Part shown: positions 2,623 through 56,965 of the stretch, piece after piece
Layout of the letters: each line of letters opens with the position of its first letter
Numbering within the stretch: the stretch's first letter is position 1
Virus record (IMG/VR): IMGVR_UViG_3300036770_007495
Span: 124,001-188,000 of that record
Reading direction: 5' to 3' (one strand)
DNA: 64,000 nucleotides
The notes under the pieces: generated by a model
The model's database searches: none
What the model was told of the DNA's origin: nothing
What the model saw: only the letters and a program-made list of their open reading frames with translations
Translations under genes and position numbers: made by a program

Positions 2623-2662
2623 CTTATGCAATTAGTTATTCAATTGCAGAATCTAATGCAAC

Positions 2663-26551: not shown

Positions 26552-26574
26552 TATTTATTGTCTTGCTCTAAATA
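26552..26574. promoter_or_regulatory. Back-to-back divergent late promoters
   Basis: TATTTA 26552-26557 (-) and TAAATA 26569-26574 (+). Confidence 0.75.
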
Positions 26575-26580: not shown

Positions 26581-26985
26581 ATGGATAATAACTTTATGAG
26601 CAATCAGCAACGCAGCTTTGGTCCAGGAGCTGCAAACACAACTGGCCCAGGCAAGGGCCGATCAGGTGCTGATGGTGAGGGCAAAATGGAACCATTGATG
26701 AAAGTTGCTCCAGTCAATGGACCAACTGTGCAGAATAAACCAGTTGCAGAGCAATTGCTTCCACATGAACTCAATCAAATGGTTCAAAAGTTTGGATCTC
26801 TCATTTACACCATCAGCAACATTACAGAAGATCTGCGCAAGTCTCTTGACAACCCAAGCTTGAAAGATCACCAGAAAGTTATCATCATTGCTGTGATTAG
26901 AATTCTCAGACCACTTGGCAAAAAGATATTCAATGCAGGCATGAAGCTGCAAGATGCACTCTTGCCATTTGAGAAAAACAAGTAA
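26581..26985 (+). CDS. Late hypothetical protein
   Basis: TAAATA 6 nt upstream; 134 aa. Confidence 0.7.
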   Translation: MDNNFMSNQQRSFGPGAANTTGPGKGRSGADGEGKMEPLMKVAPVNGPTVQNKPVAEQLLPHELNQMVQKFGSLIYTISNITEDLRKSLDNPSLKDHQKVIIIAVIRILRPLGKKIFNAGMKLQDALLPFEKNK

Positions 26986-26993
26986 ATTACTGC

Positions 26994-27437
26994 ATGGAAC
27001 GTCCATGGATCCCCATCGTAATTGCATTGGTTGTTAGCACCATTGGCGGCTTTGTTTTGCAAAACATTTTAGGTTTTTGGCCTGGTTTTGGAGCTGTTAC
27101 ATTGCTGCAAATCATCATTGGAAGTGCAACCAACCAAATGGCAAGAGTCAAGACTTCTCTTGAAATGGAGAATCAGCTCACACAGCGCATCAAAGATGCA
27201 GCCAAGCAGACTCTGAAGCTCAAATGTCCTTGCACCAACATGGTTGAGCAAATTGTACCAATTCGATTGGATGAACCCAATTTTTACAAATGCCTCAATT
27301 GCGAAAAGAACATCAGTGTCAATTTGCAAGCATCCACTGCTCTCATGACTGACATCATCAACATTGATGCAACTCACAGTCAAGTGGTAAAAACCATGGA
27401 AGAAGTTTCAAAAGAAGAAAAGTATGATGACCAGTGA
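26994..27437 (+). CDS. Membrane protein with two N-terminal TM segments and a CxC...CxxC motif
   Basis: Hydrophobic residues ~5-42; CPC...CLNC. Confidence 0.7.
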   Translation: MERPWIPIVIALVVSTIGGFVLQNILGFWPGFGAVTLLQIIIGSATNQMARVKTSLEMENQLTQRIKDAAKQTLKLKCPCTNMVEQIVPIRLDEPNFYKCLNCEKNISVNLQASTALMTDIINIDATHSQVVKTMEEVSKEEKYDDQ

Positions 27438-27822
27438 ACGATTCATTGAAAGCTTGCCTGAAGTAGCTGCATCAATTACACAACCACTCAAGCCTGAAGT
27501 ACCAGATGTTGAGCAAGTTGTAAAGCTATTTGATCAAATTGTCGCAGATGTTGCAAAAGCAGGAGACTATGTTGCAATCATGAACATTTACAATGCTGCG
27601 CAACTGTATGGTAAAAATGGTTCCTTGGAACACTTCATTCAAGCTCTCACAGAAATGTTCAAGAAGAGCGCCAAACAAGAGCATTTGCACACCATTGATT
27701 TGCTTTGCAAAAACATCAAGAACACCACTACATGCATCAATGCATTTTCTGATTACAAAAAAGAGATGCTCATGGTTGCATTTTTAGGATTTACAGGATC
27801 CATTTTGACACAAAACAGTTGA
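27424..27822 (+). CDS. Hypothetical protein
   Basis: 132-aa ORF overlapping the previous gene. Confidence 0.65.
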   Translation: MMTSERFIESLPEVAASITQPLKPEVPDVEQVVKLFDQIVADVAKAGDYVAIMNIYNAAQLYGKNGSLEHFIQALTEMFKKSAKQEHLHTIDLLCKNIKNTTTCINAFSDYKKEMLMVAFLGFTGSILTQNS

Positions 27823-27852
27823 TCAAAATTGGAAACGCATTTACATTGTGGA

Positions 27853-28119
27853 ATGAATACCACTGATATCCAAAATGCTCCCTCCAAGACAATGTCTCTT
27901 GATGAAATCGTTCGCTGGAACTGTTTGATTGAAGCCATCAAAGTTGCAGACATTCAAATGAAACATCTAGGCATTGATCCAGAAAAGTACGATTGGGTCA
28001 AGCCTGTTGCCATTGAAAAATACATTGATGAGCGATTTCATTCCATGAAACACGACATTGTGTATGAGATCAAAAATGGTGTGGAGGTGGAAAAAGAAGA
28101 AGATCTGTTTTTCAAATGA
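27853..28119 (+). CDS. Hypothetical protein
   Basis: ATG 27853 lies 5 nt after TTGATC-N17-TACATT (27819-27847). Confidence 0.7.
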   Translation: MNTTDIQNAPSKTMSLDEIVRWNCLIEAIKVADIQMKHLGIDPEKYDWVKPVAIEKYIDERFHSMKHDIVYEIKNGVEVEKEEDLFFK

Positions 28120-29093
28120 TATACGTTGTAAGCTCAACAAACAAAACAGGAATTAGCATGTCGGCGCAGGGTTACCTGCGCCCTCTGCGTGTTGCCGGCA
28201 TTGATCATGAGTTTGTTGATTACAGAGATTTTTTGAAAGATGTTGCTGCTTATCAAAACAAGAAGTGTTTGATTGTGCCAGTTCCATCTGCATGGAGATT
28301 CACCTTAAAAGATCAAGTGCCTTTCATCAATGCATTTGTTTGTGAGTCCAACGTAATACCAGAATCTGATGCAAAGAAATTGAGATACATTGAACAAATC
28401 TGGACACCCAGCAGATTTTGTCAAAAGGTGCTTTTCAACAATCATTTTGCAAGCAAGTATGTTCCATACAGCATGGAAATGCCTTTGAGAGAATGCACCA
28501 AAAATCAAAAGGTGTATACATTTCTTTGTTCCTTTGACGGCAAGTTTACCATTCATCGCAAAGGTATTATTCATGCCATCACTGCATTCAAAAGAGCATT
28601 TGAAGATATTGAGAATGTTGCAATGGTGATCAAAACATTTGACCTCAAGCCAGCAAGTGAAAAGCTTTTGAATGAATGCATCAATGGTGACAAAAGAATA
28701 ACAATCAAAACCAATTTTGTCGAGACAGTTGATGAAATCTATGATGATGTAGACTGCTATGTTTCATTGCATGCATCAGAAGGTTTTGGACGACACATTG
28801 CAGAAGCAATGCTTCGCAAAATAACTGTCATTTGCACCAACTATGGAGGCAATACTGATTTTTGCACACCTGAAACAGCCAAACTTGTAGACGGTGAATT
28901 TATTAACCACAAACATGATGCACAATATCATTGGAATGGGCTCTGGATTTATCCCAACATTCTTCACGCACAATTGCACATGCGCCGATTGTATGAAGGA
29001 TGGGTGCATACAGATGTTGAAAAAGCTTATAAACAAGTTAAATCTATGTATAGTGATGAAGCTGTAGCAAACATCATTAAGAAAATTTTATGA
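28116..29093 (+). CDS. GT4-family glycosyltransferase
   Basis: IWTPS.F, RKG, DCYVSLHASEGFG..IAEAM...VI.TNYGGN. Confidence 0.9.
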   Translation: MIYVVSSTNKTGISMSAQGYLRPLRVAGIDHEFVDYRDFLKDVAAYQNKKCLIVPVPSAWRFTLKDQVPFINAFVCESNVIPESDAKKLRYIEQIWTPSRFCQKVLFNNHFASKYVPYSMEMPLRECTKNQKVYTFLCSFDGKFTIHRKGIIHAITAFKRAFEDIENVAMVIKTFDLKPASEKLLNECINGDKRITIKTNFVETVDEIYDDVDCYVSLHASEGFGRHIAEAMLRKITVICTNYGGNTDFCTPETAKLVDGEFINHKHDAQYHWNGLWIYPNILHAQLHMRRLYEGWVHTDVEKAYKQVKSMYSDEAVANIIKKIL

Positions 29094-29827
29094 ATATACT
29101 ATTTTTTCATATTCCTAAAACAGCAGGAACTTTTTTTGCTAATCAACTAAAACACACACTCAAGCTTAATCTGTATAGATATTTTACACAGAGCAAAATA
29201 CTCGAAGCATTGAACTGTAATACAATGCCTGAAAACTCTCTAGAGGCTCTCAAGAATGTAAGATGCATCAAGACCTCACAATATGAACCTTGTATAAATG
29301 CAGATACTATTTTTGATAATGATGATATAGCTTTATATGCACATGAATTTGATGAATCAATACAAAAATTTTTTAATTCAGATAAATGGATAAAGACAAC
29401 CATTGTGCGTGATCCTACAGAGAGATTATTTTCTGCATACGCGCAGCGCCAGCGCAATAATGATTTAAATGAGTTTGCGCATTGTGTAGACTTATATCAG
29501 TTTTATTTTGTCTATCATTCACTTACACGTGATGAGCATAAGATGGAATTAAATGATGATACTGCCCCCATTATTCTAGAGCAGTCAATTAAAATTATGA
29601 AAGATAAATTTAATACTATCTTTCATCAAACTCATTTAACTCAGCAATTTACAAGAGTTTTCTCACATGTAAATAGTTTAAATGTAATAAGTGAAAGAAG
29701 TTGCAATATTACAGACGATCATGAGATACTAACAATAGATTATTCAACAGCAAAAAAACTCTGCAAATTTATTAACTATGATTATGAGTTTGTAAGAATT
29801 TTTAATGAAAGTCTACTTTACGCATGA
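29090..29827 (+). CDS. Sulfotransferase (family 2-like)
   Basis: FFHIPKTAGT (5'-PSB) and RDP.ERL.SAY (3'-PB) motifs. Confidence 0.85.
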   Translation: MNILFFHIPKTAGTFFANQLKHTLKLNLYRYFTQSKILEALNCNTMPENSLEALKNVRCIKTSQYEPCINADTIFDNDDIALYAHEFDESIQKFFNSDKWIKTTIVRDPTERLFSAYAQRQRNNDLNEFAHCVDLYQFYFVYHSLTRDEHKMELNDDTAPIILEQSIKIMKDKFNTIFHQTHLTQQFTRVFSHVNSLNVISERSCNITDDHEILTIDYSTAKKLCKFINYDYEFVRIFNESLLYA

Positions 29828-31089
29828 AAAAACAATTAGTAGTTGCAAGATACAAAGAGAATTTAGATTGGGTTAAAGACATTGCGTGTGTAGACAATAT
29901 AGTAATTTACAACAAAGGTGATGAAATTGTTGATTGTGATTTAAAAAGACACACAATAATACAATTATCAAATGTTGGCAGAGAAGCTCATACATATCTA
30001 TTTCATATTATAGAAAATTATTATAATTTAGAAGACATAATAATTTTTTCACAGGGTGATCCTTTCCCACACATACATACTCATAAAATAAACAAAGGAA
30101 CAACACTCAACGAGCACCTGTCAGCTGTTAATTTTAACACACTTGACTGCAATTCGTTGTTTGGTAAAGATTATGATGAGAGTGTAGGTCTTTTTGCAAA
30201 AAGTCTCTTTGAATACTGTTTCAAAAATGAGCTACCACCCGCGGTAAATTTTTCACCAGGTGCACAATATATAGTACCAAAATCTTGCATACTCACTAAA
30301 TCTCTTAATTTTTACAAAGACTTATATGAGAGTTTATGCATACATAGAACTGGTGTAAAAGACGGAATTTGCAATGCATGGACTGTAGAAAGAATATGGA
30401 CGTACATTTTCAATAATAAATACAAAGAAAGAGATGTATTTGCAAACTCCTCAGTAGCTACAATGTATAGTACAAAATACAATATTGAACACCTGACTCA
30501 AAAAGAAGATCAAGCAGTTATTGGTCCGCTGCAGGATGATGAAGCGCTTCTGTTGTATGCTATGATACGAGTTACAAGAATAAAGAATATCATTGAAGTC
30601 GGATTTGGACAAGGTCACTCAGCTCGCAATTTCTTAAAGGCTGTTGGCTTAGACGGAAAAGTCGTAAGTATAGACAGTAGTACAGCTCATCAACTTTCAC
30701 CCAATCATACGCCAATTTTGCAGAATGCAGAAAACATTAAAGCATCAGATATCCCATTTACAAAAGCAGATTTAGTTTTTTATGATTGTCATCACTACGA
30801 TGCACAAATGTCGCTGCATAAAAAATTGCTTGAGAGTAATATTATTACAGATGATACTATTTTGGCGTTGCATGATACAGGTCTTCATCCATACAAGGTA
30901 GTAAATTGGTCATATGAAATAGATGGTGGATGGGTACATCAAGCTGTAGAGAGAAGAATGGTTAACACTCTCAAGAGTCAGGGGTGGGATGCAATGTGCT
31001 TGGATACAAAAAAAGAAGATTATGATTGTGGGCTACTTTATAGACATGGTATTACAATTATGAAAAAATTTAAGCAGCTTATCACATGA
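29824..31089 (+). CDS. DUF3431-like domain fused to class I SAM methyltransferase (Methyltransf_24-like)
   Basis: N-terminal VVARYKE.LDW, NVGREAHTYL.HI..NY, F.QG.PF.H, GAQY.V; C-terminal IIEVG..G.S, D..H.Y, LHDT. Confidence 0.85.
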   Translation: MKKQLVVARYKENLDWVKDIACVDNIVIYNKGDEIVDCDLKRHTIIQLSNVGREAHTYLFHIIENYYNLEDIIIFSQGDPFPHIHTHKINKGTTLNEHLSAVNFNTLDCNSLFGKDYDESVGLFAKSLFEYCFKNELPPAVNFSPGAQYIVPKSCILTKSLNFYKDLYESLCIHRTGVKDGICNAWTVERIWTYIFNNKYKERDVFANSSVATMYSTKYNIEHLTQKEDQAVIGPLQDDEALLLYAMIRVTRIKNIIEVGFGQGHSARNFLKAVGLDGKVVSIDSSTAHQLSPNHTPILQNAENIKASDIPFTKADLVFYDCHHYDAQMSLHKKLLESNIITDDTILALHDTGLHPYKVVNWSYEIDGGWVHQAVERRMVNTLKSQGWDAMCLDTKKEDYDCGLLYRHGITIMKKFKQLIT

Positions 31090-32072
31090 AGATTGTAATA
31101 GTAGGTGCAGGATTGTCTGGTGCTGTAGCAGGTCGGCTACTAGTAGAAAAAGGACATTCTGTGACTATTTTTGAAACACGGAGCCACATAGCAGGTAATT
31201 GCTACGACTCAAATGTATGTGGCACAATGGTACACAACTACGGACCGCACATCTTTCACACAGATGATGAAGAGGTCTTTGCATTTTTATCTCAATTTAC
31301 TGAATGGGTGCCTTTTGAGTATAAGCCAAAAGGTATAACACGGCTTGGTGTTATTTCTTTACCATACAGCAAAAAAACACAGAATGAACTCAAAAGAGAA
31401 CTTTCACAGGAAGAAATTATTGATGTAATATTCAAAGACTATTCAGAAAAACAATGGGGCACATCATTTGATCAAATTCCTAAATCTATTACTAATAGAA
31501 TTCCCAAGACAAAGGATTGTGAAGATCCAACATGGTATGAAGGACAAAAATACCAATGTATCCCTAAAGATGGGTATACAAAAATGTTTGAAAAAATGCT
31601 GCAGGGAATTGATGTAAAACTAAATTGTTCCAGTAATGATTGGAGAGAGGAGTTTGCGGACCTTGTAATTTTTACAGGCAAAATAGATGAGTATTTTGAT
31701 TACTGTTTCGGACATCTTCCATATCGATCTCTTTGGTTTAAACACATCACATCTGAAAATAAATTTGATGTTGTTGCCTACAACCAGAATACAAAAATGG
31801 TTGATTTTACTAGAACGTATGATCATAGTTTTTTTACACCCAATCACAAAGGCACCACTATAATTACAGAAGAATATCCAGAGCCATACAATGGCAAAAA
31901 TACTCCTTTTTACCCAATTCCATGGGGTGAGGGATTACAGATGTATGCAAAATATAAAGAACTTGCTGATAAAGAGCAAAACACTATTTTTATAGGTAGA
32001 CTCGCAACATATACTTATCTCGATATGTGGATGGCAGTCAAGCAAGCATTTTTAAAGCTCAAAAACATATAG
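31086..32072 (+). CDS. glf: UDP-galactopyranose mutase
   Basis: GAGLSG, GNCYD, HNYGPHIFHT, YQ.IP.DGYT, LPYRSL, PFYP, GRLATY.Y.DM. Confidence 0.95.
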   Translation: MKIVIVGAGLSGAVAGRLLVEKGHSVTIFETRSHIAGNCYDSNVCGTMVHNYGPHIFHTDDEEVFAFLSQFTEWVPFEYKPKGITRLGVISLPYSKKTQNELKRELSQEEIIDVIFKDYSEKQWGTSFDQIPKSITNRIPKTKDCEDPTWYEGQKYQCIPKDGYTKMFEKMLQGIDVKLNCSSNDWREEFADLVIFTGKIDEYFDYCFGHLPYRSLWFKHITSENKFDVVAYNQNTKMVDFTRTYDHSFFTPNHKGTTIITEEYPEPYNGKNTPFYPIPWGEGLQMYAKYKELADKEQNTIFIGRLATYTYLDMWMAVKQAFLKLKNI

Positions 32073-32101
32073 AAAAATCAAAATTTATGCATATGATATC
32101 A

Positions 32102-33121
32102 CTAAAAATGAAAGTTAATTGACGCAAAAGAATCTTTTACTATTTTCCAAACATGATCCTGATATGTATTATCAGGCAGTAGTTCAAAATATTCCTGATA
32201 TGTTTCATATGATTTCTGTGCCCGTATTATAGACTCATCTACCTTTTTAATTGAATCTGTAAGTACTAGCTCAAAGTTTGACAGATCGTTTTTTAAAAAA
32301 TAAAAGCTATTATTAAACATATTTTGAAATAACCATTCACCGGAGTCACTTGATAATTCAAAAGAAATTATTGTATTCCTACACACTAAAGAGTGCAAAT
32401 GACGATACCCCCATGCAGTATTGCCAGGCAAACACAAAGAAATTTGATATTTTTTGAGTTCTGAATAATACTCAGCTAATGATAAAAGCTTATCTTTAGC
32501 TCCTACAACTGACAAGTAATAATCTTTACCTCTCAATCTTTCAGGCAATACTCTATCATCAGGATGCAGCCAGCCATAAAAATTATCCTTTAGAAATGAA
32601 TTATTTAATATCTTATTAAATGCTTCAATTCTCCAATTCTTGTTGTTAAAAAAATCACTACCAGTTATCTTTCCAACAAAGAAAATTTTATTTTCCCTTG
32701 CGAGATCATTAGAGTGCGGTGTGAAGTCAATCGTAAATCTAGGTATTAAGATAGTTTTTTTGGATATGCCTCTGCTATGTGGGCTGCTTTCTTCAAACTT
32801 GTTGAGAACAATTACACCATTAATTCTTTCAATTAAGTCGCTATTCAATTTAGCAGTGAGGGTAGGACATGAGTCACCTACATTCAGAAGAAATACCCCG
32901 CCTTTAAATTTCAATATTTGTGGAAGCAAAGAGTTAAATCTATCTATATTATCTTGTGCGTAATTTGAAGTATAGACATAGTCAATTATCCATATATCTG
33001 ATTGTGGAATTTTTGCTATGTCTATGTGTTCTACAATTTCATGCTTATCTCTTTTTAATGTATTTAAAAAATGCTTATAGCGTAATTGTAGTGTATTTGA
33101 AGAAGTAACAGCTATGCGCAT
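32102..33121 (-). CDS. Glycosyltransferase, GT90/CAP10- or GT47-like
   Basis: FFVG..TG...R and Y...LKKY.I.L.LPGN.AW.YR...SL; TAAATA 5 nt before ATG 33121. Confidence 0.6.
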   Translation of the reverse strand: MRIAVTSSNTLQLRYKHFLNTLKRDKHEIVEHIDIAKIPQSDIWIIDYVYTSNYAQDNIDRFNSLLPQILKFKGGVFLLNVGDSCPTLTAKLNSDLIERINGVIVLNKFEESSPHSRGISKKTILIPRFTIDFTPHSNDLARENKIFFVGKITGSDFFNNKNWRIEAFNKILNNSFLKDNFYGWLHPDDRVLPERLRGKDYYLSVVGAKDKLLSLAEYYSELKKYQISLCLPGNTAWGYRHLHSLVCRNTIISFELSSDSGEWLFQNMFNNSFYFLKNDLSNFELVLTDSIKKVDESIIRAQKSYETYQEYFELLPDNTYQDHVWKIVKDSFASINFHF

Positions 33122-33129
33122 ACTGCTAT

Positions 33130-34860
33130 TTACGCACCATAGCACTTGATGGCAAACTGCCATTCTGCATCATCAAATGGTGTCTCAACAACAATTTTGA
33201 GGCTGCTTGGTGTTGCATTGCCCTTGGTCATTGCAAGAGTACCAGTCAGTGCAGTTGTTGTAATTGCCGCATAACCCAAAGCTGTCAATGCAGCATTGTA
33301 TGTCTGACTGCCAATGAAGCAAGAGCTGCTGATGTTGGGTCCCCAAATGACGCTAAAGCGTGCAGGAGCCGCAGATGCAGCGCTGTATGTAACACTATAT
33401 GGTCCAGTCTGTGAACCAGCATCAAATGCAAAGTTGTATGTGCCTCTTGCACCAGCACCACGTACAGGAGTATCGCAATATACAAATGGCAATGCAGGGC
33501 AGCTTGGGAAGTAATCGTACTTGACAACAGGTGACTCTGTGATGTAATCAGAATATTTTGTATTCTCATCTGTAACAGAGCTTCCAATGTTCATCCATGC
33601 TGCATCTGCATAATCATTGAGCATTTGATTAACTGTGAATGCACCATATGTGTTGTTAGCAAAATCAGCTGTATCTGTTATGAAATACACATACTTTTTG
33701 TACGTGGTATTATAATCACGCAAGATGGTTGCAGCAAGATACAATGCATCAATGCCGTTTTCTGGTGCTTCTGCACCACCTGCATCACAATAGAAAGCAT
33801 TGCCACCTTTTGCGGCTTCAAGCAAAAATTGCTGTGCATCACTCACTGAATCATTAAATGTAATGACTTGCGGACAAACAATATTTCCAAAAGAGATGAT
33901 GGAAACTTTCTTGACAGCATTGGTGTGTTCTGCAAGCACTTGCAATGCAAATTGTGCGCTTCGTGTTCCCATGCTTGCGGTTTGATCCAAAACAAACACC
34001 AACACAAATGGATCCAAGCAAAGATTTGGGCATGCAACTGCTTCAGGAACTGGTGGCTCAATTGCAGCATATGCACCACCAAGCATGGTTGTTGGCAATG
34101 GCTTCAGCGGAATGGATTGTGGTGATTCAATGGAGAGGTTTTGAATCACTGGAAACTGATAAACAAAAGGAGCAGCAGGAACAGATACAACTGGTACTGC
34201 ATCAAATCCTTCAACATGAAAGTTTTTGATGGCAAATTTTGCTGCTGGTGCATTGCCGCACAATGGTGCAGCATATGAAACACCCACTTTGTAAAAAGAT
34301 GATGTTGCAACATTAAGTGATACTGGATAATCAAGCAGCACTTTGTATGCATCACCATCAAAGCGCGCTATTTCTATGAACGAGCCTGCACTATGAAGAC
34401 GAAACCTAAGAGTCTCATATGCAAGTGCAGAGCTCATGAGAGCATAGGAGGAATCCAGTGCAGACAATGCAATGGTGGTAAGATATACAAAGGTGGATCC
34501 TGTTCTGATGGTTAGTGAAGCAACATTGTTGGCTGCAACACCTGTATCCTTGCCATTACCTGATGCTGCAAACAACCCATGTGTATCAAATCCAATGCCC
34601 AAGACACCACCACTCAATCCAGAGATGGAAGCAAATGCATTGTATCCAGAACTTGGCGCATATCCAAGTGATGCGCCAATTCCGCCTCCTGTTAGTGTCG
34701 CAACAGCTGCATCATACAAGAACGTGCAAAAGCCGCCTTGTGCATTGTTGGCACCGCACAAAGCATACTGCAATGACCAAACAATGTCTTGATATGCATT
34801 GAAAGGTTCATCATGAGCAATGCTTGCTGCAAAAGCAGAGTTGGATATTTGTGTTGGCAT
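33130..34860 (-). CDS. Virion protein with legume-lectin/ConA-like and vWA domains
   Basis: GGFC.FL...LGY...LGIGFDT (L-lectin-like); FVLDQTASM...GG..PEN..DAL...FITD (vWA MIDAS). Confidence 0.75.
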   Translation of the reverse strand: MPTQISNSAFAASIAHDEPFNAYQDIVWSLQYALCGANNAQGGFCTFLYDAAVATLTGGGIGASLGYAPSSGYNAFASISGLSGGVLGIGFDTHGLFAASGNGKDTGVAANNVASLTIRTGSTFVYLTTIALSALDSSYALMSSALAYETLRFRLHSAGSFIEIARFDGDAYKVLLDYPVSLNVATSSFYKVGVSYAAPLCGNAPAAKFAIKNFHVEGFDAVPVVSVPAAPFVYQFPVIQNLSIESPQSIPLKPLPTTMLGGAYAAIEPPVPEAVACPNLCLDPFVLVFVLDQTASMGTRSAQFALQVLAEHTNAVKKVSIISFGNIVCPQVITFNDSVSDAQQFLLEAAKGGNAFYCDAGGAEAPENGIDALYLAATILRDYNTTYKKYVYFITDTADFANNTYGAFTVNQMLNDYADAAWMNIGSSVTDENTKYSDYITESPVVKYDYFPSCPALPFVYCDTPVRGAGARGTYNFAFDAGSQTGPYSVTYSAASAAPARFSVIWGPNISSSCFIGSQTYNAALTALGYAAITTTALTGTLAMTKGNATPSSLKIVVETPFDDAEWQFAIKCYGA

Positions 34861-34863
34861 TGA

Positions 34864-37440
34864 TTAGAGCTGTACAAGTGTAGGTACGAGAACGTTTGCA
34901 ATGGATGTCGGCAAACCACATTGTCCATTTGTATTTTTCCCCCATGCATACAAGTCTTTCTGTATTACACTGTCAGTGATTGCATAAACTGTTTTGTTTG
35001 ATGCATAACCAATTACAATGAAATCATCAAACTTGTTGCGCTGAATTTTTACTGCTTTGGTTTTTGTTGTTGTAGCAGCAGTTGTTGTACCATCGCCTGC
35101 AGCACCATCTGTATTAACACCACCAACACTGTACAATTCACCTGCTGTGGTGAGCATAAACAGTGTATCTGTGTGGTATTGAATTTTTTTGATGCCAGTA
35201 AATGGTGCAAGTGGCACTTTAGGAATAGTTCTATCAGTTGTTGTACCGTCTCCCAACTGATAAGCTCCGTTTTCACCCCATGTAACAATGTTGTTGCCAG
35301 TTAGTCGTGCAGCTATGCTTAGCAAGTTAGTACTGTCAGCATTGATTGTGAGAGCTACAACACCTGACAATTGAAAAGCACCAGATACACTTGAAACAGG
35401 CTTGAATACGGTTTGATCTGCTACAGCATTGTTGCCAAGAGCACCACTATTAAAGCTGCCTACGCTCCACAAATAATTTTTATCATCTGTAGTGACATAT
35501 GCATTAGAATTAGTCGTATACCCGCCAGCATATACATTGTTTACAGTTGATATGTTTGCTGATACCTTGTAGAAGATAGTTCTATTTGACTTGTTGGTCA
35601 AGCCAAGATTACCATTTTGATTGTTGCCTGCAGCATGCAATTCATCATTTTCATCAATTACAAATGCAAATTGAGTTGCTGCAGAGTTGCTAGTTGTTAC
35701 CTTTTTAACTTTGAGTGCACTCAAGCTTGAATAGTTTCCATCTTGAATGTAAATTGTTTCATTTATTTTTACTGGGGTTGTTTGATCTGTAGTTGAGCCA
35801 ATTCCAAGACACCCACTAGAGCCTTCACCCCAACCGTACAAATTGCCTGCATCAGTAATTGCAAACATACATACTTCTGGTACTGCATCTGAAGCATTTG
35901 TATATGATCCTGCAATTTGTGTTACCTTCTCATAATTAAAATACAGAGGATTAATTTGTTTGAAAGTGTTGTTAACAGTTGTTGCACCTGCACCTAGCAG
36001 ACCTACGGAACTTTTACCAGCTGTATATACATTACCTTCACTTGTTAAAAGTGCAGAGAAATTACCAATGGAGTATGCACTAATTGCATATTCATTAGCA
36101 CTAAATCCAACAGCAATGGAGAAGAAAAATGGTACATCCACATTGTTGCTGCCATAGCCAATTGCTGATCCATATGTTGCAGTGTCTGAATTACCTGCGC
36201 CTCTAACATTGTTTGCAGCATCCAAAACAAATCCATGTTTGTAACACACCATGGTTGTACCTGTATTTAGAGTAGGAATAATGATGCGGCTTGCAAATCT
36301 TGGATTTTGTGACTGTAGTACATCTACTGTTGCACTCAAGCTGCTGATTTGAGAATCAACAGCTGTTTTGCTGATGTAATCATTGATGCCCAATTGATAT
36401 TGAATTCCTTGATTTGGGAAAACTAAATTTGTAGTTGATGTATCAGTTGTTACATTGTATGCTGTAAGGGCAACATTGTCTACAGTTACAGTTGAAGGTT
36501 CAAAAATTACATCTTGCAGATACTTGATGATGTAAACAAAATTTGATGCAGTGAGCAAAGGAACATTGAAGTTTGTTCCTGTGCCACCATAATACTGGCC
36601 AATGGCTGCACACAGTGCTGAATAAACTGTACCATCTTTTGTAGAACCATCACACAAGAAATAGCCATGAGGTACTGTGGTTGAAGTTGCATTGAAATTG
36701 CCGCCTGATCCATATGGCACAATGCTGCCCACTGGAACCTGATTGCTGCTCAACACCATGTATTGAGTTTGATAAGTTCCAGGAGTTGCAAACACAAGAT
36801 TGCCAAAGCTGTCAGTTGTCAAGACAGATCCTGCAGCACCATCAAATGCGGGCATGTTGAATACTGCTGCACCACCAGCTGCACCAAACTGAATTGCTTG
36901 TGACAATTGCAAAAATGCATTGTTGCGAGGTGTAATTTGATCAAACTGTTGATTTGCAGTTGTTTGAAGCTCACGCGCACCAACAAATTCTAATCCTAAT
37001 CCTGCAAGTTCAGTGTCAAGTTGCGCTGCACTCACAGTCTTGACACTCATGACACCAGTTGTTGCATTCAACTGCAATGTCTCATCATCAACTCTGTTGG
37101 CAAGAGGTCCAGAGAAAAGTGTCCAATTGCCAGCGGTGCTGTATGGCTTTGCTGCAAGGCGATAAATGCCACCAGCAATGCTGTCATATGCTACATCACC
37201 TGCTTCTGCTTCTGCAGCCCATGTGCTTGGATGCCCTGTTCCAAAATAAAGAAACAAAGATGTTGGAAGTGCACCAGTTGTTACACCATCACCAACAAAA
37301 AGTCTGCGAGTATCAACAGTGTAGCCCAGTTCTCCTTCAGAGAGTACAACATTTGTACGTTCAGTATTAGAGCCGCGACGAATAAGCAGCTTTAAAAGTG
37401 TATTTTCTGTGATTTCAATTCTACCAGCACTATTGCTCAT
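34864..37440 (-). CDS. Tail fibre: Mtd_N-like + tail collar + RCC1-like beta-propeller
   Basis: IRRG....L.EGELGY..DT.RLFVGDG; PVGSI.PY...P.GYFLCDG...Y.AL...IG; repeated G.LY.WG.N..G.LG.G. Confidence 0.85.
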   Translation of the reverse strand: MSNSAGRIEITENTLLKLLIRRGSNTERTNVVLSEGELGYTVDTRRLFVGDGVTTGALPTSLFLYFGTGHPSTWAAEAEAGDVAYDSIAGGIYRLAAKPYSTAGNWTLFSGPLANRVDDETLQLNATTGVMSVKTVSAAQLDTELAGLGLEFVGARELQTTANQQFDQITPRNNAFLQLSQAIQFGAAGGAAVFNMPAFDGAAGSVLTTDSFGNLVFATPGTYQTQYMVLSSNQVPVGSIVPYGSGGNFNATSTTVPHGYFLCDGSTKDGTVYSALCAAIGQYYGGTGTNFNVPLLTASNFVYIIKYLQDVIFEPSTVTVDNVALTAYNVTTDTSTTNLVFPNQGIQYQLGINDYISKTAVDSQISSLSATVDVLQSQNPRFASRIIIPTLNTGTTMVCYKHGFVLDAANNVRGAGNSDTATYGSAIGYGSNNVDVPFFFSIAVGFSANEYAISAYSIGNFSALLTSEGNVYTAGKSSVGLLGAGATTVNNTFKQINPLYFNYEKVTQIAGSYTNASDAVPEVCMFAITDAGNLYGWGEGSSGCLGIGSTTDQTTPVKINETIYIQDGNYSSLSALKVKKVTTSNSAATQFAFVIDENDELHAAGNNQNGNLGLTNKSNRTIFYKVSANISTVNNVYAGGYTTNSNAYVTTDDKNYLWSVGSFNSGALGNNAVADQTVFKPVSSVSGAFQLSGVVALTINADSTNLLSIAARLTGNNIVTWGENGAYQLGDGTTTDRTIPKVPLAPFTGIKKIQYHTDTLFMLTTAGELYSVGGVNTDGAAGDGTTTAATTTKTKAVKIQRNKFDDFIVIGYASNKTVYAITDSVIQKDLYAWGKNTNGQCGLPTSIANVLVPTLVQL

Positions 37441-37448
37441 GCTTATAT

Positions 37449-38288
37449 TTAGCTAAGAGCCATCAATTCGCTAGGAATATCAAACACAGGAATTGCTTTT
37501 TTACCATATGGTGCGCCCATGTCAACAACAATGAATCCTGCTGATGACAGAGTGTATGTTGCAGAACCTGTTCCAGTGGATGCAAGATACTGAGTTGTGC
37601 CTTCTTTTGAACCCAACGGAAACTGGTTGTAGAACCCTCCAAATGCACCATATGAGCTCAAAGGCAAACGTGATGCATTGTAGAGTGATGACAATGCAAT
37701 GGCATTGCTCTTGATCTGAAGAGATTGTTCATCAATTGCTGCACACAAAGTCATTGAAGCTGTTGAGCCAATGCCCTGACCCAGCAAAGTTGAAACATTG
37801 ATGTTTGCATTTGTGATTGTACCAACACGCAATTGATTGCTGCTAATGATGATGGTGGAATTATCCACTCTTGCACTCAATCCTTGTGTTGTTGCTGCAA
37901 TTGCACCAGACAAGAATACAAGTGAAGAACTTGCAGTATTGATGGTGAGTTGATTGGATCCATTAAATTTGATGGAAGTACCATCAACTTGTGCACCAAT
38001 ATACTTCCATGCTGATGTTTGCGTTGCATCAGTACCAGTCAATTGGTACAGCAAACTGTTTTCAACAACCAAGTCACCTTGATATGCTGCAAGAGATGTC
38101 TTGTTTGCAGCAATGGGTGTAAATGATTTAGACCCCACAACCAATCCGCCCATTGTTGCACCATCACCAACAAAAACTCTTTTGGAGTCAATGGTGTAAC
38201 CCAATTCACCTTGATCAAGAGTAATCAGCAGTCTTTGTGATTCAAGACCGCGGCGCAATTTGAGTTTAATGATTTTTATGTCAGGCAT
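37449..38288 (-). CDS. Tail fibre-associated protein with Mtd_N-like N-terminus
   Basis: LRRG....LDQGELGY..D.KRVFVGDG; VD..SI/TI repeats; start ATG 38288. Confidence 0.8.
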   Translation of the reverse strand: MPDIKIIKLKLRRGLESQRLLITLDQGELGYTIDSKRVFVGDGATMGGLVVGSKSFTPIAANKTSLAAYQGDLVVENSLLYQLTGTDATQTSAWKYIGAQVDGTSIKFNGSNQLTINTASSSLVFLSGAIAATTQGLSARVDNSTIIISSNQLRVGTITNANINVSTLLGQGIGSTASMTLCAAIDEQSLQIKSNAIALSSLYNASRLPLSSYGAFGGFYNQFPLGSKEGTTQYLASTGTGSATYTLSSAGFIVVDMGAPYGKKAIPVFDIPSELMALS

Positions 38289-38293
38289 ATTGT

Positions 38294-39895
38294 TTAGGGA
38301 ATATAAAATTCTTTGACGTACTTCCACACACCAATGCCGCCATCACATTCACCGCTGTGTGCAGCTCTGAAGCTTGTAGAGATAGTAGCGGATTTGATGC
38401 GAATAAAACCAGTTGCAACTGCAGGCTGCAATCCATACTTTGTCAAATAATCAGTGATGTATGAAGTTGTAGTTCCTGTGCCAGATCTATTCTTGTAACA
38501 GAAAGCAATGTTGCGCTTGTCAATGTTGGGTGCATTGTTTGCGTCTGTTGTCTTGATGTCTACAGCAGAAGAAGTTGTTACATTTGTGACACTTGCATAG
38601 AAATTCTTGTAATACAATTGATTGTCAAGATAAATGATGAGAGTTGTTACTCTATCAATAACTTTTGGTCTGCTGCTTGTGCCTGTTGATCTTGTGAAAG
38701 AAGAATTGTAAACATTGTCGCTGATGTCTGTTACAGAATTGTTGACAGTGAATGTGTAAAAACCGTCTCTGCACTTGTCATATGCGCGTGTAACAATTTC
38801 TACAGCAATGAGTTTATTCTGCGCCATGTATTCAGGTGTTATTGTGTAAGTTTGAACACCAGTATTAATTGAGCAGCTGCCTTTCTCACCCTTTTCAGCA
38901 AGATAGTAGTAATCTTTGTATCTGAAATTTGTGTAGAACATTTGAGGTTCATCAATTGCATAAAAGAGCGTATTGCCAATTGTGAGAACATTCATGTTGG
39001 TGCTGTCACCATTTTGACTGTACACACTAACTGATGATACTCCTTGTGAAAGTACAATTGCCCATCCATTGTCACCTGTTGCAGGAGTTGCAGGATTTGC
39101 TGCAGGGTTCACATGAGATCCTTTGGATACCTGAGTCATGTACATGTTGTTGTTGTACTGCTCATTGAACCAAACGGTGTATCTTCCTGCACCGCTGCGA
39201 GATACACTTGCAACATTGTATGCAGAACGAATAGTGGTGCTAACGCCCAGTGTGCCGGGTGCTGCAGTAACATTTTGTGGCAGCGGAAATGTAAAGTTGT
39301 TTGTATCAGTTCTTGTAACTGGGTATGAACCATTAAGTGTTGCATCAGAAGCAGTGAGGCTAATGATTTGTCCTGTAGCAAGACCATGATTAGCTTTGGT
39401 GCACTGTACAATGCCACCGCTTGAACCTGTATCAACTGTATATGAAATTCCTGTGATGGGCTTGCCATCAAAATTTACCCAGCATTGACGAATGGGGCTA
39501 AGAAAAATTTGCTCAACAAGTCCTTTGCTGTTGACGTTGATGGTATCAATTTGAGAATATGATCCTTCAGGATTTGGATCCAAGTCAGGCAATGCTTCCA
39601 AAACAACTTGACCAAAATCTACATGTCCATTGCCATCTGTCACAAGTGGAAACCCTTCACCAGAAACAGAATCAGTGTTAGTGTATTCCAACTCACCAGC
39701 AGAAAGTTTGCCAGAAATTGTGACGCTGCCACTCACCTGAATGCCATTGCCAGATACACCCAAAGCAAGTGCAGAAGCTTGACCACTACCATCATACATG
39801 GTTTGCAATCCCTGTGTAGGAAGTGCTGCACCTTCAGCATGCAATACACCCTCGTAGGTAGATTCAACTGTTTGATCGAGTAAACTGGTAGGCAT
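38294..39895 (-). CDS. Tail fibre-like structural protein
   Basis: INVNSKG.V, WVNFDG, HGL.TG, IRSAYNVASV.R.G.G.Y.V.F; TAAATA 7 nt upstream. Confidence 0.75.
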   Translation of the reverse strand: MPTSLLDQTVESTYEGVLHAEGAALPTQGLQTMYDGSGQASALALGVSGNGIQVSGSVTISGKLSAGELEYTNTDSVSGEGFPLVTDGNGHVDFGQVVLEALPDLDPNPEGSYSQIDTINVNSKGLVEQIFLSPIRQCWVNFDGKPITGISYTVDTGSSGGIVQCTKANHGLATGQIISLTASDATLNGSYPVTRTDTNNFTFPLPQNVTAAPGTLGVSTTIRSAYNVASVSRSGAGRYTVWFNEQYNNNMYMTQVSKGSHVNPAANPATPATGDNGWAIVLSQGVSSVSVYSQNGDSTNMNVLTIGNTLFYAIDEPQMFYTNFRYKDYYYLAEKGEKGSCSINTGVQTYTITPEYMAQNKLIAVEIVTRAYDKCRDGFYTFTVNNSVTDISDNVYNSSFTRSTGTSSRPKVIDRVTTLIIYLDNQLYYKNFYASVTNVTTSSAVDIKTTDANNAPNIDKRNIAFCYKNRSGTGTTTSYITDYLTKYGLQPAVATGFIRIKSATISTSFRAAHSGECDGGIGVWKYVKEFYIP

Positions 39896-39918
39896 TTGCT
39901 TTTATTTATCGCAATCGG

Positions 39919-41802: not shown

Positions 41803-41810
41803 ATGAATAT

Positions 41811-45740: not shown

Positions 45741-45761
45741 ATGAGTATTTAACTCATTGCA

Positions 45762-46718: not shown

Positions 46719-46733
46719 ATGTGTATTTATGCG

Positions 46734-47381
46734 TCAAGAGGTGAGACGTGGAACGATGGAATACTGGAAAAAGCGTGTGGTGAGAGGCAACCCACTGCGA
46801 GTAGCAAGTTCTGCACCCACAACCTTGAGATTATCATCTTCTGCAACAATGGGCAGCTCGTTTTTGCTCAAATACAAATTGAAAGCATTGCCTTGAGCAT
46901 CACTTGCAACAGCAAAAACATCATGTGATGTAACAGGCATCAACTGTGTTGACATGATGTTGATCTCTTTTACAGTGTTGTAATAAGAATCTTTTGCCAA
47001 CTCAAACAACACCTTGTGAGTGCCTGTGTAGCTGGATGCATACTGCAAAACAAACAAAGCAGTTAATGTTGTGACAAATGAGGATGTCTGTTTGACATAA
47101 GTATGATTTATGTTTTGAGTGATGCTCATTATTTTGCCTGATTCAGCAATTTCAATGGCACCTGCAGATGCAATGGTGTTGTGCAAATCCAATGCATCTT
47201 CATATGTTGTTCCATCACCAAAATCCGCTACAATGTGCAGCACAGGATCTGTCTCTTCTTGAATTTGATACAAGTTGAAGTTGATGGGTGCAATGCCCTT
47301 GATGAAATAAGGTCCATACACACTCACATAATCAGCAACAGGCTGTGTAGCAGATAGGTTGATGTTTAAAGTTGCATTCAT
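46734..47381 (-). CDS. Structural protein with PKD-like Ig domain
   Basis: DFGDG...HTY motif; located in the tail block. Confidence 0.6.
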   Translation of the reverse strand: MNATLNINLSATQPVADYVSVYGPYFIKGIAPINFNLYQIQEETDPVLHIVADFGDGTTYEDALDLHNTIASAGAIEIAESGKIMSITQNINHTYVKQTSSFVTTLTALFVLQYASSYTGTHKVLFELAKDSYYNTVKEINIMSTQLMPVTSHDVFAVASDAQGNAFNLYLSKNELPIVAEDDNLKVVGAELATRSGLPLTTRFFQYSIVPRLTS

Positions 47382-50353: not shown

Positions 50354-50396
50354 CACAGTTATTTAAACGCATGGCGCAGAAATGTAAATCATTTTA

Positions 50397-50855: not shown

Positions 50856-50863
50856 AATGCTAT

Positions 50864-51328: not shown

Positions 51329-51373
51329 AGCTTTTGCAAATGGGCATAAATAAACTTGTCCATTGTATTTACT

Positions 51374-56960: not shown

Positions 56961-56965
56961 TCTAC

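What the first reader, a model, noticed from the sequence alone, without database searches (positions are those of the whole stretch)
28116..33121. Glycan-tailoring island (GT4, sulfotransferase, DUF3431-MTase, Glf, GT90-like) abutting the tail-fibre block
Seen: four genes coupled by ATGA overlaps plus a convergent GT. Together they could build a galactofuranose-containing, sulfated and methylated glycan (inference from family functions). The GT90-like gene has a late promoter made from the stop of the last tail gene, so it is co-timed with the Ser/Thr-rich fibres. Known: GT90 includes protein O-glycosyltransferases. Inference: virion glycosylation, or host-surface conversion for superinfection exclusion.
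Basis: partly seen in the sequence, partly recalled or inferred. Interest (0 to 1): 0.65.

Follow-up and report, generated by a model that had tools for sequence, protein, structure and literature searches.

The report
Phage glycan-tailoring gene island beside tail fibres
An uncultivated 225-kb T4-like water phage carries five intact sugar-modifying enzyme genes next to its tail-fibre genes, apparently to build a methylated, sulfated, galactofuranose-bearing glycan late in infection, but whether that glycan goes on the virion or on the host surface cannot be told from sequence.

Summary
Five intact genes lie at window 28116-33121. Four overlap by ATGA on the plus strand; the fifth converges on them and ends the tail-fibre operon. 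Four family calls are confirmed: a GT4 glycosyltransferase with an intact EX7E motif, a Sulfotransfer_2 enzyme with both PAPS-binding motifs, a DUF3431 domain fused to an O-methyltransferase, and UDP-galactopyranose mutase (Glf). The "GT90-like" call is not confirmed. That protein is a GT-B glycosyltransferase of a small orphan family nearest Pfam PF13524 (CgeB-like).

In relatives, the GT4 and the orphan GT-B gene stay fixed at the replication/tail-fibre junction, while the genes between them are swapped. Both transcription units start at a genome-wide TAAATA-N5/6-ATG motif. Fibre genes share it and seven replication genes lack it.

All five enzymes are predicted soluble. The complete genome has no hydroxymethyl-pyrimidine route, so DNA glycosylation is unlikely. 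It also holds a second, 14-gene glycan operon like the "LPS clusters" of large cyanophages.

The acceptor is unresolved: virion proteins about 0.45, host envelope glycan about 0.35. This is a new variant of a known kind, of moderate interest.

The parts
26569..26574 (+). TAAATA motif 6 nt before the ATG of the first gene of the plus-strand unit (putative late-type promoter or start signal)
   Evidence: Sequence. The motif is conserved before the orthologous gene in all six relatives examined. Genome-wide enrichment.
26581..28119 (+). Four small conserved ORFs of unknown function (134, 147, 132 and 96 aa; the 147-aa one has an N-terminal TM helix), upstream of and coupled to the GT4 gene
   Evidence: Orthologues occur in the same order in all relatives.
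28116..29093 (+). g1: GT4-type (Glycos_transf_1) glycosyltransferase, conserved across the clade
   Evidence: PF00534 3.5e-10 and PF13692 7.3e-9. EX7E motif E222...E230 is invariant in 7 orthologues of 52-87% identity. No TM helix.
29090..29827 (+). g2: PAPS-dependent carbohydrate sulfotransferase (Sulfotransfer_2)
   Evidence: PF03567 25.6 bits, above the cut-off of 22. 5'-PSB motif HIPKTAGT (residues 7-14) and 3'-PB motif VRDPTERLFSAY are present and conserved in orthologues.
29824..31089 (+). g3: DUF3431 domain (residues 1 to about 205; probably glycosyltransferase-like, unproven) fused to a class-I SAM O-methyltransferase (residues about 215-421)
   Evidence: PF11913 2.5e-16. AF2 model pLDDT 81.7. 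The C-terminal domain matches COMT/CCoAOMT-type O-methyltransferases at Z 16.6-14, and sugar O-methyltransferases SpnH, MeT1 and CalS11 at Z 14.6-12.4. Elsewhere DUF3431 is fused to GT2, Nucleotid_trans and HtrL_YibB.
31086..32072 (+). g4: UDP-galactopyranose mutase (Glf), a short form
   Evidence: PF03275 2.1e-54 and NAD_binding_8 6.5e-20. 1.6e-61 to D. radiodurans UGM 3HDQ and 3.2e-61 to E. coli 1I8T, with conserved motifs aligned and about 35 residues missing between query residues 103 and 110. Present only in this phage and its near-identical relatives; absent from L009 and the other relatives.
32102..33121 (-). g5: orphan GT-B glycosyltransferase (nearest Pfam family PF13524, CgeB-like; not a demonstrable GT90), last gene of the tail-fibre operon
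   Evidence: No Pfam or PDB sequence hit. AF2 pLDDT 82.2. GT-B fold matches. Atlas feature score 0.96 to viral PF13524 clusters. Only 61 relatives among 1.84e9 representatives. Distant members hit PF13524 above threshold.
33127..33132 (-). TAAATA motif 5 nt before the g5 ATG; its TAA is the stop codon of the 576-aa fibre-block gene
   Evidence: The motif is also present before g5 in L009, L011 and L002, and absent in L003, L005, L006 and L010, where g5 abuts the preceding gene.
33130..51817 (-). Tail-fibre block (11 ORFs: 576 aa with VWA_2; 858 aa with Mtd_N, Collar and RCC1; then 292, 533, 627, 1309, 318, 215, 991, 152 and 317 aa), mostly preceded by the TAAATA motif

Best explanation
The island is a working, phage-encoded, cytoplasmic module that builds and tailors a glycan. 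A retaining GT4 enzyme (g1) and an orphan CgeB-like GT-B enzyme (g5) form a conserved pair. They sit at the boundary between the replication module and the tail-fibre operon in a clade of uncultivated 200-225-kb T4-like aquatic phages. Between them lies a swappable cassette of decorating enzymes. In this phage the cassette holds a PAPS sulfotransferase, a DUF3431 domain (possibly a third transferase) fused to a SAM O-methyltransferase, and Glf, which converts host UDP-galactopyranose into UDP-galactofuranose. The expected product is a short glycan with O-methyl and O-sulfate groups that, in this phage only, contains galactofuranose. Both transcription units begin at the TAAATA-N5/6-ATG motif that precedes the fibre genes, so the enzymes are probably made late, together with virion proteins. 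My preferred acceptor is the phage's own structural proteins, most likely the tail fibres, glycosylated in the cytoplasm before or during assembly as in chloroviruses and mycobacteriophages. On that reading the variable cassette gives related phages different virion glycotypes. Shown: gene integrity, family and fold assignments, catalytic motifs, synteny, cassette variation, motif statistics, and the absence of membrane, lipid-carrier and hydroxymethyl-pyrimidine genes. Inferred: promoter function and timing, the glycan's composition, and above all the acceptor.
For: Family and motif evidence.

Conserved frame with a variable interior:
- window: GT4 | ST | DUF3431-MT | Glf, then convergent g5
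- L009: the same without Glf
- L011: GT4 | ST1-type | MT24, then g5
- L003 and L005: GT4 | ST2 | MT24, then an MT-like ORF and g5
- L002 and L010: GT4 | unknown 337-339 aa, then g5, with an MT24-like or DUF7796-like gene inserted between the last fibre gene and g5

A non-orthologous sulfotransferase occupies the same slot in L011, which argues that sulfation itself is under selection.

Timing: the motif is enriched 5-fold and sits on start codons. In the window it precedes 7 of 11 fibre-block genes, g5 and the first gene of the GT4 unit, and none of 7 identified replication genes (helicase, gp46/47-like, UvsX, gp32, RNase H, primase). It is conserved in relatives.

Location of the chemistry: no TM helix in g1-g5. 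No Bac_transf initiating transferase in the genome.

DNA acceptor disfavoured: no thymidylate-synthase-family hydroxymethylase, no TET/JBP, no C5 DNA methylase and no DpdA/TGT in the complete genome.

The arrangement is stable in natural populations.

Precedents: soluble virus-encoded GTs, including the GT-GT-methyltransferase fusion A064R, glycosylate the chlorovirus capsid protein in the cytoplasm (PMC7019647). Mycobacteriophage capsid and tail-tube glycans are cited in PMC12619734.
Against: There is no direct evidence for any acceptor. GT4, GT2, GT10 and GT11 enzymes and Glf are typical of O-antigen and capsule synthesis, where they also look soluble by sequence and act on undecaprenyl-linked intermediates supplied by the host. 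The genome's second, 14-gene glycan operon lies next to phoH and resembles the cyanophage 'LPS clusters', which are usually read as host-surface modification. A more distant g5-family gene lies beside DNA polymerase, not beside fibres, so adjacency to fibres is not a family-wide trait. The fibres lack dense Ser/Thr tracts. Promoter function of the motif is untested, and it could instead be a translation signal in a genome without Shine-Dalgarno sites. No RNA data exist.
Confidence: 0.45

Rival explanations
1. Host envelope remodelling. The enzymes act on the host's undecaprenyl-linked O-antigen, capsule or S-layer-glycan intermediates at the inner face of the membrane. They add Galf, methyl and sulfate groups, which mask or terminate the receptor glycan. 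The effect would be superinfection exclusion, or keeping progeny from sticking to infected cells and debris. The cassette would vary because host glycans vary.
For: The enzyme families are typical of bacterial surface-polysaccharide loci. The second glycan operon lies beside phoH, like the LPS clusters of S-SSM7, P-SSM2 and S-SCSM2R. The nearest Glf homologues are chromosomal genes of Verrucomicrobiota, two of them next to a DUF3431 gene. The island lies next to the receptor-binding genes, with which a receptor-masking function would co-evolve.
Against: The genome has no initiating phosphoglycosyltransferase. Neither glycan locus encodes a TM protein, flippase, polymerase or Gtr-type component. 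Late expression in a lytic phage leaves little time to renew the cell surface. Known seroconversion systems belong to temperate phages and use membrane proteins.
Confidence: 0.35
2. DNA hypermodification. One or both glycosyltransferases glycosylate modified bases in phage DNA to evade restriction, as T4 alpha- and beta-glucosyltransferases do.
For: The best Foldseek match of g5 is T4 alpha-glucosyltransferase (1y6f, E 1.2e-9, TM 0.54-0.59). A distant g5-family member sits beside DNA polymerase and the clamp loader. The phage is T4-like.
Against: The AGT match ties with many GT4 enzymes. The complete genome lacks a thymidylate-synthase-family hydroxymethylase, TET/JBP, a C5 DNA methylase and DpdA. 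As far as I know, sulfation, O-methylation and Galf are not known on DNA glycans. The TET/JBP control search found nothing in any of the 14 control genomes either, so that one absence is weak.
Confidence: 0.05
3. Other or no function. The genes might be recently acquired cargo ('stuffer') with no role in infection, or might act on a small molecule, a glycolipid or host cytoplasmic proteins.
For: The island has low GC (0.30-0.35), and Sullivan et al. raised the stuffer idea for cyanophage LPS clusters. No acceptor is identified.
Against: All five reading frames are intact and their catalytic motifs are conserved. GT4 and g5 are kept at 44-87% identity across diverged relatives, with low GC in those relatives too, so the low GC is not a mark of recent transfer. 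A sulfotransferase is replaced by a non-orthologous one in the same slot. The arrangement is stable across several independent metagenomes.
Confidence: 0.12

Closest known systems
'LPS' or cell-wall-modification gene clusters of large T4-like cyanophages (S-SSM7, P-SSM2, S-SCSM2R)
   Same: These are large T4-like aquatic myoviruses of 225-250 kb with clusters of soluble GT1/2/10/11 enzymes and NDP-sugar epimerases, one near phoH, and their function is unknown (PMC3037559; PMC12801897). This genome's second operon (genome 106589-117540) matches that description.
   Different: The island studied here sits at the tail-fibre boundary. It has a conserved two-GT frame with a swappable cassette and carries a sulfotransferase, a DUF3431-methyltransferase fusion and Glf. 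None of g2, g3 or g5 has a tblastn homologue in 50,697 deposited phage records. The phage is only about 33% identical to cyanophages in gp32.
Chlorovirus PBCV-1 capsid glycosylation machinery (A064R and others)
   Same: Soluble, virus-encoded glycosyltransferases without signal peptides act in the cytoplasm on a virion protein. A064R fuses transferase domains to a sugar O-methyltransferase that caps the glycan (PMC7019647). This is analogous to g3 (DUF3431 plus O-methyltransferase) and to the g5-like plus MT24 fusions P0123 and P0160.
   Different: It is a eukaryotic virus. No sequence relationship was shown. No sulfation or Galf is reported there. The acceptor here is unknown.
Mycobacteriophage virion O-glycosylation (Freeman et al. 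2023, cited in PMC12619734)
   Same: Phage-encoded glycosyltransferases decorate capsid and tail-tube subunits. It is the only well-documented case known to me of a tailed phage glycosylating its own virion.
   Different: Those are siphoviruses of Actinobacteria, and I could not read the primary paper. No homology was tested. The candidate acceptors here would be tail fibres of a T4-like myovirus.
Bacterial galactofuranose O-antigen loci (glf plus a Galf-transferase, e.g. Klebsiella WbbM GT111/DUF4422, Kingella pamABC)
   Same: Glf is paired with dedicated transferases (PMC12269835). The nearest non-DUF3431 clusters to the g3 N-domain in the ESM Atlas are DUF4422 and RgpF (score 0.87-0.89, a lead only). 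DUF3431 ORFs lie next to glf in two Verrucomicrobiales loci.
   Different: No HMM-level link between DUF3431 and DUF4422 was found. The L009 relative keeps the DUF3431-methyltransferase gene without glf. No lipid-carrier or export genes are present.
T4 alpha- and beta-glucosyltransferases (DNA glucosylation)
   Same: A T4-like phage; g5 has a GT-B fold with T4 AGT as its top Foldseek hit.
   Different: No hydroxymethylcytosine or hydroxymethyluracil pathway is present. There is no sequence similarity.

Membership tests
GT4 / Pfam Glycos_transf_1 (g1) | HMM match above the curated threshold | tested here: met
   PF00534 40.1 bits against 26.4; PF13692 36.5 against 27.
GT4 / Pfam Glycos_transf_1 (g1) | EX7E catalytic/donor-binding motif in the C-terminal Rossmann domain | tested here: met
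   E222-x7-E230 (SLHAsEGFGrHIAEAM) is invariant in 7 orthologues.
Sulfotransfer_2 PAPS-dependent sulfotransferase (g2) | HMM match above the curated threshold | tested here: met
   PF03567 25.6 bits against 22; only the N-terminal 158 residues align.
Sulfotransfer_2 PAPS-dependent sulfotransferase (g2) | 5'-phosphosulfate-binding loop (PKxGT/S) and 3'-phosphate-binding RxxxS motif | tested here: met
   HIPKTAGT and VRDPTERLFSAY were read from the translation and are conserved in L009, L003 and L005. The motif definitions come from my own knowledge of the family.
Class I SAM-dependent O-methyltransferase, COMT/CCoAOMT-like (g3 C-terminal domain) | HMM match above the curated threshold | tested here: inconclusive
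   Methyltransf_24 22.5 bits (below 26.3) and Methyltransf_3 19.8 bits (below 22). However, the domain is about 50% identical to many stand-alone MT24 proteins.
Class I SAM-dependent O-methyltransferase, COMT/CCoAOMT-like (g3 C-terminal domain) | Rossmann-like methyltransferase fold | tested here: met
   VIA Z 16.6-14 over residues about 215-418 with rmsd 3.4-3.5 A, to COMT, CCoAOMT, TrmR and SpnH.
DUF3431 (g3 N-terminal domain) | HMM match above the curated threshold | tested here: met
   PF11913 60.5-63.8 bits against 25. The family's function is unknown. A glycosyltransferase role is a lead only, from domain fusions, the glf neighbourhood and Atlas features.
UDP-galactopyranose mutase (g4) | GLF domain plus N-terminal FAD-binding Rossmann motif; conserved substrate-binding Arg and Tyr residues | tested here: met
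   PF03275 184.8 bits and NAD_binding_8 71.6 bits. In the alignment to 3HDQ the motifs GPHIFHT, KQWG, the R of the mobile loop, LPYRSL, YPxP and GRLATY are kept. About 35 residues of the helical domain are absent.
GT90 / Pfam Glyco_transf_90 (g5) | HMM match to PF05686 | tested here: not met
   No Pfam hit for g5 at E<=10. Two distant family members reach only 20.4-21.4 bits, below the cut-off of 24.
GT90 / Pfam Glyco_transf_90 (g5) | Fold closer to GT90 structures than to other GT-B families | tested here: inconclusive
   POGLUT2 Z 15.6 and POGLUT1 Z 14.0 (244 residues aligned) tie with GT4 enzymes at Z 16.0-15 and with AGT at Z 15.2.
Pfam Glyco_trans_1_2 (PF13524, CgeB/YkvP-like GT-B) (g5) | HMM match, direct or through family members | tested here: inconclusive
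   g5 itself has no hit. Distant members of its family reach 30.9 and 36.6 bits against a cut-off of 25. Atlas feature score is 0.96 to viral PF13524 clusters. The best BFVD matches are CgeB-like proteins.
T4-type late promoter | TATAAATA -10 element upstream of late genes, recognised by a gp55-type sigma factor | tested here: inconclusive
   Only the TAAATA core is conserved, and it lies 5-6 nt from the ATG. It is enriched and associated with fibre genes. A gp55 homologue was not searched for, and no transcript data exist.
Phage seroconversion systems (GtrABC or O-antigen modification) | Membrane flippase, bactoprenol-linked transferase and serotype-specific membrane GT | tested here: not met
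   No TM helices in g1-g5 or in the 14 proteins of the second operon. No Bac_transf in the genome.
Phage DNA glycosylation systems | A route to 5-hydroxymethyl-pyrimidine (TS-family hydroxymethylase, or C5-methylase plus TET/JBP) | tested here: not met
   PF00303, PF12851 and PF00145 are all absent from the complete genome. The PF12851 control search found nothing in any control genome, so that absence is weak.
Virion protein glycosylation systems (chlorovirus or mycobacteriophage type) | Glycan covalently attached to virion proteins | not testable with these tools
   This needs purified virions and mass spectrometry. The phage is uncultivated.

The most novel reading that the evidence does not exclude
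A clade of T4-like aquatic phages runs a modular, cytoplasmic protein-glycosylation system of its own. Two conserved glycosyltransferases, one of them from a previously unrecognised GT-B family, lay down a core sugar on tail-fibre proteins. A hot-swappable cassette (sulfotransferase, O-methyltransferase, Glf, possibly a DUF3431 Galf-transferase) then sets a strain-specific, sulfated and methylated virion 'glycotype'. This would be a phage equivalent of O-antigen serotype variation, and it could tune adsorption, stability or evasion of host or grazer recognition.
Probability: 0.35. Interest if true: 0.75.

Novelty: new variant of a known kind. Interest (0 to 1): 0.5.

Why it matters
Glycan gene clusters in large aquatic T4-like phages have been known since 2010, and nobody knows what they do. 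This locus offers a sharper handle than most:
- a conserved two-transferase frame at the tail-fibre boundary;
- late-type start motifs on both transcription units;
- an interior cassette that is exchanged between close relatives, including non-orthologous replacement of the sulfotransferase.

That pattern points to diversifying selection on a glycan structure. If the acceptor is the virion, this would extend phage self-glycosylation from mycobacteriophages to T4-like myoviruses and add sulfation and methylation to the known chemistry. If the acceptor is the host envelope, it would be a lytic-phage form of receptor masking.

The work also defines a small orphan GT-B family (61 representatives among 1.84 billion) that repeatedly partners with MT24 methyltransferases. 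And it gives DUF3431 a testable role next to Glf.

Tried and rejected
- **GT90 membership of g5.** Rejected at sequence level and unresolved at fold level.
- **Sequence link of g5 to any solved structure.** None found.
- **Paralogy between g5 and GT4, or between g5 and the 339-aa cargo gene of L002.** None found by hhalign.
- **DNA modification.** There is no TS-family hydroxymethylase, TET/JBP, C5-methylase or DpdA. FolE and QueD are present, but without DpdA they do not indicate 7-deazaguanine DNA.
- **A phage-encoded PAPS supply.** A 150-aa P-loop kinase has APS_kinase as its best Pfam hit (32 bits), but it also matches many generic P-loop families, so this is inconclusive.
- **DUF3431 = GT111/DUF4422.** There is no HMM link.
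- **Homologues in deposited phages.** There are none for g2, g3 or g5, and one weak hit for g1. DNA-level search also found none.
- **IMG/VR scan for g5 relatives.** It found only one other contig.
- **Expression data.** No RNA runs hold the locus.
- **Complex prediction.** Not used. An enzyme-substrate contact is transient, and a negative result would say nothing.
- **Aeromonas T4-like phage Glf genes.** They sit in an early region near motA with no annotated GT, so they are not a useful model.
- **Other.** Only genetic code 11 was used.

Full report
**Setting.** The window is bases 124001-188000 of a 224,703-bp IMG/VR virus record with terminal repeats, rated complete. It is a distant T4-like myovirus. 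It encodes gp32, primase, RNase H, UvsX and gp46/47-like proteins. Its gp32 is only 31-34% identical to those of Pelagibacter, Methylophilales and cyanobacterial T4-like phages. The DNA has no near match among 50,697 deposited phage records. Only genetic code 11 was used.

**Observation.**
- g1, 28116-29093 (+)
- g2, 29090-29827 (+)
- g3, 29824-31089 (+)
- g4, 31086-32072 (+)
- g5, 32102-33121 (-)

The three internal junctions, and the junction with the upstream 96-aa ORF, are ATGA overlaps. g5 is the last gene of a minus-strand block of tail-fibre-like genes with Mtd_N, Collar, RCC1 and VWA domains. The island has low GC, 0.30-0.38 per gene against 0.41 for the genome. Contigs from three other studies carry the same arrangement at about 94-98% identity; one 6,551-bp contig spans 28728-33792. 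The only structural difference is a 16-nt indel at 32095, in the spacer between the convergent genes. The locus is therefore real and circulating, not an assembly artefact.

**What each gene is.**
- **g1** is a GT4-type glycosyltransferase (PF00534, 3.5e-10). Its EX7E motif is invariant across seven orthologues.
- **g2** passes the Sulfotransfer_2 threshold. It has both PAPS-binding motifs, HIPKTAGT and VRDPTERLFSAY, and orthologues conserve them.
- **g3** has a DUF3431 domain (2.5e-16) followed by a class-I O-methyltransferase. The AF2 model has pLDDT 81.7. The C-terminal domain matches COMT/CCoAOMT-type enzymes at Z 16.6-14, and the sugar O-methyltransferases SpnH, MeT1 and CalS11 at Z 14.6-12.4.
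- **g4** is UDP-galactopyranose mutase (PF03275, 2.1e-54; 1.6e-61 to the D. radiodurans enzyme). The conserved motifs are present, and about 35 residues of the helical domain are missing.
- **g5** has no Pfam hit even at E<=10 and no sequence match to any solved structure. Its AF2 model (pLDDT 82.2) has a GT-B fold. T4 alpha-glucosyltransferase, BshA and other GT4 enzymes, POGLUT1/2 (GT90), a chlorovirus GT and exostosins all score within a narrow band: Foldseek E 1e-9 to 1e-6, VIA Z 16.0-13.

**Family of g5.** A profile search of 1.84 billion cluster representatives was justified because the family was still open after Pfam and the word search. It found only 61 relatives, 29 of them at E<=1e-30. 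Distant members reach Pfam threshold for PF13524 (Glyco_trans_1_2, CgeB-like; 30.9 and 36.6 bits). For PF05686 (GT90) they reach only sub-threshold scores of 20-21 bits against a cut-off of 24. The ESM Atlas (score 0.96 to viral PF13524 clusters) and BFVD (CgeB-like viral proteins) agree. So "GT90-like" should read "orphan GT-B transferase nearest PF13524". The step from GT90 to protein O-glycosylation has no basis.

**Comparative anatomy.** Twelve close homologues of g5 exist. Every contig long enough to judge shows the same layout:
- the fibre block, then g5;
- a convergent cassette;
- the GT4 gene, four small conserved ORFs, and the replication genes.

GT4 (52-87% identity) and g5 (44-76%) are fixed. 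The interior varies:

| Contig | Between GT4 and g5 |
|---|---|
| window | ST / DUF3431-MT / Glf |
| L009 | ST / DUF3431-MT, no Glf |
| L011 | a different, Sulfotransfer_1-type enzyme / MT24 |
| L003, L005 | ST2 / MT24, plus an MT-like ORF |
| L002, L010 | one unknown 337-339-aa protein; an MT24-like or DUF7796-like gene is inserted inside the fibre operon just before g5 |

 Sulfation and methylation thus recur through non-orthologous genes, which argues for selection on the product. Glf is a recent addition in this phage. Low GC is shared by the orthologues in relatives, so it does not mark a recent transfer.

Further afield, a g5-family gene sits in a glycan cluster with two MT24 genes beside DNA polymerase. 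Two family members are fused to MT24 domains. The most constant partner of this GT family is therefore an O-methyltransferase. Adjacency to fibres is specific to this clade.

**Timing signal.**
- Genome-wide, TAAATA-N5-(A/G)TG occurs 45 times against 8.5 (maximum 16) in shuffles. Twenty-eight of the 45 sit exactly on called starts, and the N6 spacing adds 12 more.
- In the window it precedes 7 of 11 fibre-block genes. It precedes none of seven recognised replication genes.
- It also precedes the first gene of the plus-strand unit that runs from 26581 through g4. That copy is conserved in all relatives, while the one before g5 is present in four of eight.
- The genome has essentially no Shine-Dalgarno sites: 15 of 324 genes, against 6% at random positions.

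The motif may be a T4-type late promoter giving leaderless mRNAs, or it may be a translation signal. In either case the island shares its start signal with the fibre genes. No RNA runs exist to test this.

**Which acceptor?**

*DNA is unlikely.* The complete genome has no thymidylate-synthase-family hydroxymethylase, TET/JBP, C5-methylase or DpdA. FolE and QueD are present.

*No membrane machinery.* All five enzymes, and all 14 proteins of a second glycan operon, lack TM helices. No initiating phosphoglycosyltransferase is encoded.

*The second operon.* It lies at genome 106589-117540, outside the window. It encodes GT11-, GT17-, GT10-, GT7C/GT2- and GT2-like enzymes, two NDP-sugar epimerase/dehydratases, a sugar C-methyltransferase, further methyltransferases and DUF5672. 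It lies near phoH, and a 204-kb relative conserves at least its GT17-like gene. It closely resembles the "LPS clusters" of S-SSM7, P-SSM2 and S-SCSM2R, whose function is unknown (PMC3037559, PMC12801897).

*Weighing.* The evidence fits two readings.
- The first is cytoplasmic glycosylation of virion proteins, as in chloroviruses. There, soluble viral GTs, including the GT-GT-methyltransferase fusion A064R, build the capsid glycan (PMC7019647). Mycobacteriophages are a second precedent (cited in PMC12619734).
- The second is decoration of host lipid-linked envelope glycans.

I favour the first at about 0.45, because of the late-type signals, the insertion of tailoring genes inside the fibre operon in relatives, and the absence of any membrane component. 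The second stands at about 0.35.

**A lead on DUF3431.**
- The nearest bacterial Glf homologues (44-52% identity, similarly short) are in Verrucomicrobiales and Opitutales MAGs.
- Two of those loci carry a DUF3431 ORF directly beside glf; none of the other 78 loci does.
- Atlas features place the g3 N-domain nearest DUF4422 (score 0.89, a lead only). DUF4422 is the GT111 Galf-transferase domain of WbbM (PMC12269835).
- No HMM link was found, and L009 keeps the fusion without Glf.

The idea that DUF3431 is a (Galf-)transferase remains a hypothesis.

**Verdict.** The GT90 label is corrected. The locus is a new variant of a known kind: a phage glycan gene cluster with a conserved frame, a swappable tailoring cassette and an orphan GT-B family. 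The acceptor needs experiments.

Noticed in passing
whole genome; e.g. window 37441-37451, 41803-41813, 45741-45751 (minus strand), 56955-56965 (plus strand): TAAATA-N5/6-ATG sits directly on many start codons (45 N5 sites against 8.5 expected). Shine-Dalgarno sites are essentially absent (15 of 324 genes). This suggests leaderless or near-leaderless late mRNAs from a T4-like late promoter, or a non-SD translation signal, and a host that does not use SD.
   Followed up: partly
genome 106589-117540, outside the window (L016 590-11541, minus strand): A second, 14-gene glycan operon of soluble enzymes: GT11-, GT17-, GT10-, GT7C/GT2- and GT2-like transferases, two NDP-sugar epimerase/dehydratases, a sugar C-methyltransferase, MT23- and MT24-like methyltransferases and DUF5672. 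It resembles cyanophage LPS clusters and lies near phoH. Its GT17-like gene is conserved at 60% identity in the 204-kb relative.
   Followed up: partly
genome 121462-122088 (-) and 123175-123822 (+), just before the window (L016 15463-16089 and 17176-17823): QueD/PTPS and GTP cyclohydrolase I genes are present, but the genome has no DpdA/TGT. The pterin or preQ0 branch therefore probably does not feed DNA modification.
   Followed up: partly
genome 68385-68837 (L013 1465-1917, +): A 150-aa P-loop kinase whose best Pfam hit is APS_kinase (32 bits, above cut-off), though it also matches many generic P-loop families. It could supply PAPS for the sulfotransferase; this is unresolved.
   Followed up: partly
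L022 7091-7947 and L024 4662-6110 (Verrucomicrobiales MAG contigs): The closest bacterial Glf homologues (44-52% identity) are in Verrucomicrobiota. In two of these loci a DUF3431 ORF lies directly beside glf, which hints at a functional link and possibly at the gene's source or the host lineage.
   Followed up: partly
window 26581-28119: Four small ORFs (134, 147, 132 and 96 aa) are conserved in order in all relatives and coupled to the GT4 gene. None has a family assignment. The 147-aa protein has an N-terminal TM helix.
   Followed up: partly
P0123 (L018 1251-2864) and P0160: Members of the g5 GT-B family occur as fusions with MT3/MT24 O-methyltransferase domains. A more distant member lies in a glycan cluster next to DNA polymerase B and the clamp loader.
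   Followed up: partly
window 32095: Population variants in three other metagenomes carry a 16-nt insertion in the 29-nt spacer between the convergent stop codons of glf and g5.
   Followed up: no
window 2209-2631 (-): A SegE-type GIY-YIG homing endonuclease gene (PF19835, 4.3e-34).
   Followed up: no
window 33130-34860 (-): The last fibre-block protein (576 aa) has a weak von Willebrand A domain match (25.5 bits against a cut-off of 27). In relatives L003 and L005 the protein at this position instead carries Ig-like (HYDIN/ASH) domains.
   Followed up: no
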